A DNA stretch of 64,000 nucleotides, from IMG/VR virus record IMGVR_UViG_3300029911_000001, positions 62,001 through 126,000 of that record; one strand, written 5' to 3'. A model generated the notes under the pieces. That model was not told the DNA's origin. It saw nothing but the letters and a program-made list of their open reading frames with translations, and searched no databases. Positions 8,055 through 8,970 of the stretch are shown here, piece after piece. Numbering within the stretch: position 1 is the first letter of the stretch; the number at the start of each line of letters is the position of its first letter. The position numbers were made by a program, and so were the translations under genes.

Positions 8055-8970
8055 TTTATGCAACCAAATTCTTTGCATCTTCTATGACCTTGTACCGTGA
8101 TTCCGACCCAATGCTCACAGACCACGGGGCTGTCTCTGCCGGTGTGATGCTGCGGCTCGAAAAGGAGGTTCCCGAGCGATGTAATATTTGTTCTCATTAC
8201 GAGAACAATTGTACTTAATATGACAACACAGCGCTGGGGCCGGCTTTTTGAATGCAAAGGGCTGTGTCGCCCAGTTTGATTCCTCTCGTTCGACCGGGCC
8301 ATTGGCGTGGCGCAAACCCCCTGCGATTGAGATTCCGGGCAGTAAAAGAACCGGCGTTATATTTGGTTTGAGGAGAACCAAAACCCGCCCGGAATGTGGT
8401 GCGAAGCCGCAAGGTTTCCCTTGTCCCTGAACACCGTTGTCCATGGCCGGTGCCAGTGCAGCGTCTATGCTGCTCGTTCGCATAACTTGTGCTGGCGGCT
8501 GTCGGACTTGACCCTTATTCCAATCTTCCCTGTCGGGCTCCATGGGGGCGGTTCCTATCATGACCAGCAACTTCGGCTGTGGACGTTCGATACAGGCTCC
8601 CGGACGCGACCGGGACGACCGTTGGCAAACCCTTACGTCCGCTACCCACAGCTAAACATTGGAGCAAAGTGAATTTCTTCACTGAGGAGTCCCTGCCTCC
8701 GCCGACTAATGGCGGGTGTGTCAACTATCACCGCCGAACATTGGGCACCATGCTCTCGCACAGTAGGACTCTTACCCGCCGCTTATAAACTCCCAAGGCT
8801 ATGTGCAACATTGACAGTCCTACGCAAGAGCGGTAGGCTAACGATTCCGCCGACTTACTGCCAGACTAGCATCAAAGCCGAAGTGAACTCCGGGTATATG
8901 AATGCTAGACCACGGCTTGTAGGTTACCCTACTGGTCATTGCCTTTCGTGCGGGTCAGTCTCCCGCTCAT
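8055..8970 (-). ncRNA. Large (~900 nt) highly structured ncRNA (GOLLD/ROOL-like size and context; family not established)
   Basis: No credible CDS; dense nested helices and GNRA loops; starts right after the promoter at 8977-9008. Confidence 0.65.

What the first reader, a model, noticed from the sequence alone, without database searches (positions are those of the whole stretch)
8055..8970. ~900-nt ornate non-coding RNA directly upstream of the amber-gated PTH gene
Seen: no ORF with an RBS or protein-like composition, but many helices on the minus strand. Examples: GCGGG/CCCGC, GTAGG-GTAA-CCTAC inside GACCA/TGGTC, CTAGCAT/ATGCTAG, GTAGGACT/AGTCCTAC, AGTGAA-GAAA-TTCACT, GCTGTGG/CCACAGC, CAAGG-GAAA-CCTTG, ATTCCGGGCGG/CTGCCCGGAAT, TTGTTCTC/GAGAACAA. 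It has its own promoter. Established: giant ncRNAs such as GOLLD and ROOL occur in phages near tRNA genes. I cannot assign a family, so it may be a new class.
Basis: partly seen in the sequence, partly recalled or inferred. Interest (0 to 1): 0.75.

Follow-up and report, generated by a model that had tools for sequence, protein, structure and literature searches.

The report
Phage array of new structured RNAs
The gene-free 900 bases between a jumbo phage's tmRNA gene and the next protein gene are real non-coding RNA with its own promoter. It looks more like a string of about six small, separately evolving folded RNA modules, none in Rfam, than one giant ornate RNA.

Summary
Window 8055-8970 (minus strand) has no credible ORF under the standard code or with any one stop codon read as sense. 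It has no Pfam or Rfam match and sits behind a promoter type conserved across this phage group. Folding energy alone is unremarkable, with 200-nt z-scores of -0.3 to -1.8 except at the 5' end. The support comes from comparison with other phages. Contigs of about nine related peat/soil phages share pieces of the region. Compensatory base changes support helices in module D2 (8795-8650), D4 (8482-8400) and D5 (8395-8332), and more weakly in D3 (8657-8568). A fifth family, D6, is well supported in relatives, but the window holds only a diverged copy interrupted by a ~70-nt insert.

The modules come and go independently between phages. In some they are separated by tRNA-like genes, and in one contig probably by protein genes. 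In one phage D2 ends 5 nt before a tRNA-like gene. My best reading (about 0.55) is a multi-RNA operon, like a tRNA operon, cut into several small stable RNAs of unknown function. A single modular giant RNA in the manner of GOLLD is the main rival (about 0.25). It is not GOLLD, ROOL, RNase P RNA or an intron. These are new RNA families of a known general kind. No expression data were available.

The parts
8977..9008 (-). Phage promoter (GTTGTTCAGAAACG, 13 nt, GTATACT). It predicts a start near 8970.
   Evidence: The motif occurs only three times in the 231-kb genome: window 9145, 9008 and 6017. It is also listed as promoter-like. The same -10 (GTATACT) and an A-rich/TTGTAGCC-type upstream box head the homologous RNA regions in L082, L087, L091 and L095/G034, and the suppressor-tRNA clusters.
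8947..8970 (-). 5' leader with the terminal hairpin GCGGG-AGACUGA-CCCGC
   Evidence: The 24 nt are identical in L082 directly after its promoter. With no variation there is no covariation test. Its role as a 5' stabiliser is inferred.
8796..8946 (-). D1: 5' domain. About 8946-8850 is window-specific (nested hairpins, one with a GUAA loop). 8849-8796 is a linker with CGGCGGAAU shared with L082.
   Evidence: This is the only 200-nt window with a strong folding z-score (-4.2), but 8790-8975 alone gives z=-1.8. The middle part is absent from L082. No homologue was found, so the structure is untested.
8650..8795 (-). D2: core module. P2 helix (8771-8766 with 8692-8687) encloses the GNRA hairpin Pa (8763-8748), the motif CCAAUGUU (8744-8737) and the variable hairpin Pb. 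Then come the GAAA hairpin Pc (8683-8668) and a second CCAAUGUU (8662-8655).
   Evidence: Homologues are in L082, L087, L088, L091, L095/L097 and L100. P2 reads GAGUCC/GGACUC, GAGCCC/GGGCUC, GAGCGA/UCGCUC or GAGAGA/UCUCUC in different phages. On alignment A8, 89% of cells pair, 5 pairs and 10 cells change on both sides, and 0 of 500 shuffles reach this; slid controls pair at 37-48%. The Pc stem differs in most homologues, while the GAAA loop is kept in five of the seven sequences (L091 and L095 differ). Model R2 scores 101 bits here and finds a single copy in the genome.
8568..8657 (-). D3: rod-like hairpin. Outer helix GCUGUGG (8652-8646) with CCACAGC (8582-8576), a conserved internal loop UGCCAACG.UCG, and an apical hairpin CCCGG/CCGGG.
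   Evidence: Homologues are in L087, L100 and G005, where it stands alone 60 nt after a tRNA-Ala. On alignment A5, 100% of cells pair but only 2 pairs change on both sides, and 64 of 500 shuffles reach this. Support from covariation is therefore weak.
8488..8566 (-). D3b: window-specific stretch closed by UUGCUGG/CCAGCA
   Evidence: Seen only in the MFE prediction. No homologue was found in any locus.
8400..8482 (-). D4: cloverleaf-like four-way junction. A closing helix (8482-8477 with 8405-8400) holds three arms; the third is CAAGG-GAAA-CCUUG.
   Evidence: There is one homologue, L088 2210-2299, 79% identical. On alignment A7, 24 of 24 pairs are kept in both sequences, 5 pairs change on both sides, and 9 of 500 shuffles reach this; slid controls pair at 29-44%.
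8332..8395 (-). D5: closing helix (8395-8385 with 8342-8332) around the conserved hairpin UUUGGU/ACCAAA and the conserved strand GCCGGUUCUUUUAC
   Evidence: Homologues are in L082 and L089. On alignment A6, 97% of cells pair, 4 pairs of the outer helix change on both sides, and 14 of 500 shuffles reach this.
8227..8329 (-). D6-like remnant. 8329-8309 and 8239-8227 match the two halves of the D6 pseudoknot domain. They are split by a ~70-nt insert (about 8310-8241).
   Evidence: Full D6 (about 110-170 nt, H-type pseudoknot plus a GGUCAC helix) is present in L082, L087, L088, L089, L091, L094 and L100. On alignment A10, 94% of cells pair, 7 pairs and 14 cells change on both sides, and 0 of 500 shuffles reach this. 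With 8310-8241 skipped, the window reads as the D6 consensus up to CUGUG. The later conserved D6 parts are missing.
8246..8309 (-). 64-nt island inside the insert, shared with an unrelated contig
   Evidence: 62 of 64 bases are identical to L081 1201-1264. L081 is a JGI peat contig encoding an integrase C-terminus and ScpB. Nothing else in L081 matches the phage.
8189..8235 (.). AT-rich palindrome (UUGUUCUC-GUAAU-GAGAACAA plus ACAAUUGU). It may be the 3' end, a terminator or a DNA operator.
   Evidence: It is terminator-like on the + strand only and unique in the genome. A related palindrome lies between genes in L089. A similar 35-mer sits on a contig of assembler depth about 90 in the peat runs.
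8027..8188 (-). Spacer, and a weak promoter-like site for the downstream gene (TTGCAT, 17 nt, TACAAT at about 8055-8027). The finding's own interval ends at 8055.
   Evidence: 8162-8096 is 79% identical to L087 2541-2621. L087 has a GTATACT promoter at the equivalent place before its gene. The window's site is read by eye; it is below the threshold of the scan.

Best explanation
The region is a multi-RNA operon in the phage's translation-RNA island (tRNAs, amber-suppressor tRNA, permuted tmRNA). One phage promoter at 9008-8977 starts a transcript of about 780 nt near 8970. The transcript is a string of self-contained folded modules: D1, D2, D3, D3b, D4, D5 and a damaged D6. Each is closed by its own terminal helix, and short A/U-rich linkers separate them. 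I infer that host and phage RNA-processing enzymes cut the transcript into small stable RNAs of about 60-170 nt. RNase E would cut at the linkers, and RNase P wherever a tRNA-like gene follows. This is how tRNA operons are handled, and how the two small stable RNAs in phage T4's tRNA cluster are made (from memory).

Shown: the region is non-coding; the promoter motif is conserved; the modules are conserved; helices inside D2, D4, D5 and D6 covary; modules occur independently in different phages; tRNA-like genes sit next to modules in relatives.

Inferred: transcription, processing and stability.

What the module RNAs do is not known. My guess, at low confidence, is that they act in trans on the translation or tRNA-processing machinery during infection, for example as decoys or binding partners for host factors. 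That guess rests only on the genes they are always found with.
For: - Non-coding.
- No known RNA family, in the window or in seven relatives' loci.
- Promoter motif, and its conservation at the head of homologous arrays.
- Conserved modules in about nine distinct contig lineages, at 77-89% identity. That is as high as the neighbouring protein gene's DNA (72-86%).
- Covariation inside modules; hairpin tables.
- Modules occur independently. D3 is alone in G005. D2 is alone in G033/G034. L089 has D5 and D6, L094 has D6 plus a tRNA-like gene, and L088 has D2 and D4 about 1 kb from D6 with two called genes between.
- In G034, D2 lies between a terminator-plus-promoter and a tRNA-like gene with an encoded CCA that starts 5 nt after D2. 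Further modules follow, separated by GUUU-type linkers.
- tRNA-like elements lie between modules in L088 and L100.
- The phage carries its own RNase P RNA (179.6 bits).
Against: - There are no expression data. No RNA run was listed, so neither the transcript nor any processing has been seen.
- In this phage no tRNA-like element or terminator interrupts the 780 nt, so here it could stay one molecule.
- The linker motif is loose, and the two CCAAUGUU junctions of D2 do not fit the RNase E consensus.
- Covariation rests on few sequences (2-8 per module). It is weak for D3 (64 of 500 shuffles) and cannot be tested for D1 and D3b.
- Folding energies are close to those of shuffled sequence for most of the region.
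- The proposed function is a guess from gene neighbourhood.
Confidence: 0.55

Rival explanations
1. One large modular RNA, GOLLD-like in style. The ~780-nt transcript stays intact and folds as a multi-domain particle. Peripheral domains are swapped between phages and tRNAs are sometimes embedded. It may assemble into multimers through its GNRA loops.
For: There is a single promoter and no internal terminator or promoter in the window. Three GNRA-capped hairpins lie on one strand. The whole-region fold gives z=-2.97. GOLLD also has a variable half, sometimes carries tRNAs in a linker, and lies near tRNA islands (bioRxiv 10.1101/2024.12.08.627333, read).
Against: No core is shared by all relatives. 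Each module is found without the others somewhere. Every covarying helix is local to one module. In L088 called genes separate the modules. The window's D6 is broken by an insert and lacks its conserved 3' parts. There is no GOLLD or ROOL hit even at E<=10.
Confidence: 0.25
2. A long structured 5' leader or cis-regulator of the downstream 'PTH-like' gene (7661-8014).
For: It lies directly upstream on the same strand, and no convincing terminator stands between them.
Against: The gene has its own promoter-like site; in L087 this is a clear GTATACT promoter. In L088 the modules lie about 2 kb from the gene, with called genes between. In G005 and G034 the modules sit in tRNA-type surroundings, and no such gene lies in the few kb read around them. 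Relatives L004, L085 and L094 keep the gene but lack the RNA modules D1-D5.
Confidence: 0.05
3. Mostly non-functional filler: decaying remnants of RNA genes and recombination scars in a hot spot where homing-endonuclease genes and other cassettes come and go.
For: At the same place L004 and L089 carry an Endonuclease VII-type gene on the opposite strand. The window's D6 is interrupted and diverged. D1-mid and D3b have no homologues. Folding energy is near random for most of the region. Homing endonucleases are known to reshape phage tRNA regions (PMC2330249).
Against: D2, D4 and D5 keep their pairing through compensatory changes. They are as conserved as the neighbouring coding DNA. The promoter is conserved. 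This reading probably does apply to the 3' third of the interval.
Confidence: 0.12

Closest known systems
GOLLD RNA (Rfam RF01998) and ROOL RNA (RF03087)
   Same: They are phage or prophage encoded and lie in or next to tRNA islands. They are hundreds of nucleotides of non-coding sequence with many hairpins. GOLLD has a variable half and sometimes holds tRNAs in a linker, and neither has a known function.
   Different: No sequence or structure match appears, even at E<=10. There is no universally conserved core and no inter-module helices. The modules are found separately. Multimer formation was not tested.
Small stable RNAs C and D (species 1 and 2) in the tRNA gene cluster of phage T4 (from memory, not checked here)
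   Same: They are small structured RNAs of unknown function, encoded among phage tRNA genes, co-transcribed with them and released by the tRNA-processing enzymes. This is the arrangement I infer here, and the layout in G034 fits it.
   Different: No sequence relation was tested or is expected. Here there are more modules (five to seven), the phage is a jumbo phage that recodes an amber codon, and processing is only inferred.
Ordinary tRNA operons and tRNA-like elements
   Same: D4 has a cloverleaf (four-way junction) outline with an acceptor-like stem of 6-7 bp. Modules share operons and linkers with tRNA-like genes in relatives.
   Different: ARAGORN and the Rfam tRNA model find nothing in 8055-8970. 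D4 has no T-loop or D-loop signature and has a 4-nt connector where tRNA has none. D2, D3, D5 and D6 are not cloverleaves.
Bacterial RNase P RNA, tmRNA, group I/II introns, OLE, HEARO
   Same: They are large structured RNAs. RNase P RNA and tmRNA really are encoded by this phage.
   Different: The phage's RNase P RNA lies elsewhere in the genome (C1:143707-144029, 179.6 bits). Its tmRNA is the neighbour at 9374-9774. None of these families matches the region.

Membership tests
GOLLD (RF01998) | Match to the conserved 3' half of the Rfam covariance model | tested here: not met
   cmscan of all 4227 Rfam 15 families found no hit at gathering score on the window, none at E<=10 on 7900-9200, and none at E<=0.5 in seven relatives' loci.
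ROOL (RF03087) | Match to the Rfam covariance model (multi-pseudoknot core) | tested here: not met
   Same searches.
GOLLD/ROOL-type particles | Assembly of the RNA alone into closed multimers (nanocages) | not testable with these tools
   This needs cryo-EM or native gels of the in-vitro transcript. Background was read.
Bacterial RNase P RNA class A (RF00010) | Match to the covariance model (P4 helix and conserved regions) | tested here: not met
   There is no hit in the region. The genome's true copy is at C1:143707-144029, outside the window.
tRNA / tRNA-like | Cloverleaf with D-loop and T-loop signatures, detectable by ARAGORN or RF00005 | tested here: not met
   ARAGORN lists nothing in 8055-8970, and no RF00005 hit appears at E<=10. 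D4 has a cloverleaf outline only.
Group I / group II introns, OLE, HEARO | Match to the respective Rfam models | tested here: not met
   no family at E<=10.
Structured non-coding RNA (general) | Base pairs kept through compensatory changes in independent homologues | tested here: met
   D2a: 5 pairs and 10 cells, 0 of 500 shuffles. D4: 5 pairs, 9 of 500. D5: 4 pairs, 14 of 500. D6 family: 7 pairs and 14 cells, 0 of 500. D3 is weak at 64 of 500. D1 and D3b are untested.
Structured non-coding RNA (general) | The RNA is expressed from the predicted strand | not testable with these tools
   No RNA run was listed for the region. Only DNA contigs could be laid on it.
Protein-coding gene (any code) | An open frame across the region with protein-like composition or a family match | tested here: not met

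The most novel reading that the evidence does not exclude
The modules are the variable and core domains of one previously unknown class of giant phage RNA. It would be a third tRNA-island RNA alongside GOLLD and ROOL, with D2 as its core, and it would stay intact and assemble into a higher-order particle that acts on the translation apparatus of the infected cell.
Probability: 0.15. Interest if true: 0.85.

Novelty: new variant of a known kind. Interest (0 to 1): 0.62.

Why it matters
Phage tRNA islands are already known to hide large or stable RNAs whose function nobody knows, such as GOLLD, ROOL and the T4 RNAs C and D. This locus adds at least four covariation-supported RNA families that are absent from Rfam 15 (D2, D4, D5, D6; D3 is weakly supported).

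They sit in a group of peat and soil jumbo phages that also encode tmRNA, RNase P RNA and an amber-suppressor tRNA, and whose neighbouring gene has a conserved in-frame amber codon. If the modules act on translation or tRNA processing, they belong to the toolkit with which these phages take over or recode host translation.

The patchy, cassette-like distribution also shows how RNA genes are shuffled in such islands. The families are small and easy to synthesise, so testing them is practical.

Tried and rejected
Searches that found nothing:
- Rfam at gathering score and at E<=10 gave nothing in the region.
- BLAST against the phage and plasmid collections gave nothing.
- BLAST of the 936 nt against 25 related IMG/VR records gave only a ~58-nt marginal hit in G005, which proved to be D3.
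- Model R1 (D3) over 32 records found only G005.
- Model R2 (D2) over 37 records found only the window's own genome, G033 and G034.
- Exact-pattern scans of IMG/VR found few or no new members.
- Two GTDB genome scans were empty, so no host or prophage copy was found.

Ideas rejected:
- RNase P RNA. The phage has a normal copy elsewhere.
- A pseudogene of the Endonuclease VII gene that occupies this place in L004. tblastx found nothing.
- A real 89-codon ORF at 8302-8033. It has no ribosome-binding site. Its first 19 codons are simply the 64-nt island, which in L081 continues differently.
- A leaderless peptide starting at 8970. Its first 8 codons are identical at the DNA level in L082, and the sequences then diverge to different stops.
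- A compensatory U-A to A-U change in the inner D5 hairpin. It is not consistent column by column, so I dropped it.

Steps that did not help:
- Strain variation in the peat runs: all phage contigs were identical.
- My first z-score script timed out.
- Terminase searches, meant to find relatives, were empty.

Full report
**Setting.** The window is bases 62001-126000 of a 231-kb IMG/VR phage record estimated 74% complete. The DNA is found in many peat metagenome runs. Around the finding, all on the minus strand, lie:
- six tRNA genes, one of them a CTA-anticodon (amber-suppressor) tRNA at 5323-5396;
- a permuted tmRNA at 9374-9774;
- two small ORFs;
- the gene-free stretch in question;
- a 114-codon gene at 7661-8014 whose third codon is TAG.

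- No reading frame crosses 8055-8970 under the standard code, or with any one stop codon read as sense.
- The longest frames translate to Arg/Cys/Trp-rich strings with no Pfam match.
- Thermodynamics alone is not persuasive. The whole region folds 2.97 sd better than 20 shuffles. In 200-nt windows only 8800-8999 stands out (z=-4.2; the tmRNA next door gives -3.6 and -2.9), and the rest lies between -0.3 and -1.8. The two halves folded separately give z=-1.8 and -0.44.
- A better single-sequence signal is the three GNRA-capped hairpins with stems of 5 bp or more on the minus strand. The genome average predicts about 0.18. Clusters of three within 900 nt occur in the 231-kb genome only here and at the tmRNA, at the RNase P RNA, and at two other sites.

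**Promoter.** The motif AGTTGTyCAGAAACG-N11-13-GTATACT occurs exactly three times in the genome, all in this RNA-gene island (window 9145, 9008, 6017). The copy at 9008-8977 puts a start near 8970. Related phages have the same -10 box and a similar upstream box in front of their homologous RNA regions and of their suppressor-tRNA clusters.

**Known families.** Rfam 15 gives nothing in the region at the gathering score or at E<=10. In seven relatives' loci it finds only tmRNA and tRNAs. The phage does encode a class A RNase P RNA, but far away at genome 143707-144029; its relative G005 has one too. The region is therefore not GOLLD, ROOL, RNase P RNA, an intron, OLE or HEARO.

**Finding homologues.**
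- Public phage and plasmid collections had no match.
- Two IMG/VR contigs are identical to the window. The next relative (L004; downstream protein 71% identical) has, in place of the RNA, small ORFs and an Endonuclease VII-type gene on the other strand.
- Fifty more distant relatives were collected with a 393-residue protein. Only one, G005, shares anything: a ~90-nt hairpin (D3) in its tRNA cluster.
- The useful route was through the downstream protein. Its homologues at 63-86% identity led to contigs from ENA, JGI and Logan assemblies. BLAST against these showed a patchwork of conserved pieces at 77-89% identity, as high as the protein gene's own DNA.
- A motif scan added L095/L097.

**Anatomy (minus strand).**
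- Promoter: 9008-8977.
- 5' leader hairpin: 8970-8947, identical in L082.
- D1: 8946-8796. Its middle is window-specific.
- D2: 8795-8650.
- D3: 8657-8568.
- D3b: 8566-8488, found in the window only.
- D4: 8482-8400.
- D5: 8395-8332.
- D6-like remnant: 8329-8227, interrupted by an insert.
- AT-rich palindrome: 8235-8189.
- Spacer down to the next gene's promoter-like site.

**Covariation.**
- *D2.* Helix P2 reads GAGUCC/GGACUC (window, L082, L087), GAGCCC/GGGCUC (L100), GAGCGA/UCGCUC (L088) and GAGAGA/UCUCUC (L091). Hairpin Pa switches G-C to C-G under a GNRA loop. Hairpin Pc has a different stem in most homologues, and its GAAA loop is kept in five of the seven sequences; L091 and L095 differ. 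On alignment A8, 89% of cells pair, against 37-48% when partners are slid. Five pairs and ten cells change on both sides, and no shuffle in 500 reaches the observed pairing or covariation score. L095 lacks the 5' strand of P2, so the helix is not universal.
- *D4.* It folds as a four-way junction. All 24 pairs are kept in the window and in L088, with five double changes (9 of 500 shuffles).
- *D5.* The outer helix has four double changes among three sequences (14 of 500).
- *D3.* It pairs fully in four sequences but hardly varies (64 of 500).
- *D6 family.* Seven relatives share an H-type pseudoknot and a second helix, with seven pairs and 14 cells changed on both sides (0 of 500).
- These counts rest on few sequences and on structures I drew from the same sequences. 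They are good evidence of RNA structure but not a formal significance test.

Three of the nine are supported by compensatory changes, two are conserved without variation, and two cannot be tested. GTAGGACT/AGTCCTAC conflicts with the covarying P2 and is not conserved. The last belongs to the palindrome.

**One RNA or several?** Evidence that the modules behave as independent units:
- D3 stands alone after a tRNA in G005.
- In G033/G034, D2 stands alone between a terminator-plus-promoter and a tRNA-like gene with an encoded CCA that begins 5 nt after D2. More modules follow, separated by short GUUU-type linkers.
- L089 has D5 and D6.
- L094 has D6 and a tRNA-like gene.
- L088 has D2, D4 and a tRNA-like gene about 1 kb from D6, with two called genes between.
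- L088 and L100 carry tRNA-like elements between modules.
- Every covarying helix is internal to one module.

This is the pattern of a tRNA-type operon of small RNAs, not of a single fold. In this particular phage nothing obviously interrupts the 780 nt, and GOLLD also has a variable half and embedded tRNAs. The single-RNA reading therefore survives as a rival.

**The 3' third.**
- DNA contigs from four peat runs showed no strain variation in the phage. They did reveal foreign contigs matching 8246-8309.
- One such contig (L081) carries an integrase C-terminus and ScpB, then non-coding DNA with 62 of 64 identical bases, and shares nothing else with the phage.
- Comparison with the D6 family explains this. 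If about 70 nt (8310-8241) are skipped, the window reads as the D6 consensus from CAAUCGCAGGGGG... through CCCCAGCGCUGUG. The island is therefore part of an insert in the D6 hairpin. The conserved downstream parts of D6 are replaced by the AT-rich palindrome.

**How it probably works.** My reading is that the promoter drives one primary transcript, protected at its 5' end by a stem-loop. The modules are then released by RNase E-type cuts in the A/U-rich linkers and, where tRNA-like genes adjoin, by RNase P; the phage encodes its own RNase P RNA. Transcription, cutting and stability are all inferences, because no RNA data could be found. The function is unknown. The constant company of tRNAs, suppressor tRNA, tmRNA and RNase P RNA points to the translation or tRNA-processing machinery as the target, and I hold that only weakly.

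**Novelty.** The kind is known: structured RNAs of unknown function in phage tRNA islands. The families are new. They have no Rfam match and are restricted so far to about nine contig lineages from peat and soil. No copy was found in 37 IMG/VR records beyond three, nor in one genome per GTDB species by exact pattern.

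Noticed in passing
window 7661-8014 (-); L004 2960-3303; L087 2882-3181: The downstream gene has TAG as its third codon (ATG CAC TAG in the window, ATG ACC TAG in L004, ATG CAC TAG in L087). Every relative examined carries a CTA-anticodon tRNA nearby. The 'PTH' label is unverified: there is no Pfam hit at E<=1, no PDB hit, and only PHROG 'hydrolase' at 1e-4.
   Followed up: partly
genome G000:C1:143707-144029 (+), outside the window; L077 5949-6326 (-): Both this phage and its relative G005 encode a bacterial class A RNase P RNA (179.6 and 170.3 bits). 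In G005 it lies inside the tRNA cluster.
   Followed up: partly
window 9374-9774 (-): A permuted (two-piece) tmRNA with tag peptide ANSNVALPIAA. All relatives have one, with weak similarity to the betaproteobacterial tmRNA model, which may hint at the host.
   Followed up: no
window 9015-9107 (-) and 8970: At both the 9145 and the 9008 promoter copies, an ATG begins 7 nt after the -10 box. This could make leaderless transcripts. The 9107 one opens a 30-codon basic ORF.
   Followed up: no
L105 1290-1435 (-); L088 about 2310-2510; L100 about 560-720 and 255-335: tRNA-like genes with normal acceptor, D and T arms but an extra 50-130 nt inside. One has an encoded CCA. ARAGORN and Rfam miss them. 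They sit between the RNA modules in relatives.
   Followed up: partly
L004 2291-2935 (-); L089 3721-4371 (-): An Endonuclease VII-type (homing-endonuclease-like) gene occupies the place of the RNA array in two relatives, on the opposite strand. This fits cassette turnover in this island.
   Followed up: partly
window 8189-8235; L089 7856-7904: An AT-rich palindrome containing ACAATTGT / GTACAATTGTAC. A 35-nt match with 3 mismatches sits on a short contig of assembler depth about 90 in all four peat runs, so something abundant carries it.
   Followed up: partly
L081 1-1272: A peat contig with an integrase C-terminus and ScpB shares only the 64-nt island (97% identical) with the phage, and it ends 8 nt later. 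The island may be a small mobile insert or part of a D6-like RNA in another element.
   Followed up: partly
genome G000:C1:175139-175746 (+) and 185235-185822 (-), outside the window: Two more clusters of three GNRA-capped hairpins within 900 nt. Both overlap long open frames, so they may be chance.
   Followed up: partly
L105 about 1140-1215 (-); L088 about 2130-2205; L100 about 395-420: A further conserved module after D2 in relatives, absent from the window. Its closing helix differs between phages (GGGGAAGG/CCUUCCCC against CCGGGUGAG/CUCACCCGG).
   Followed up: no
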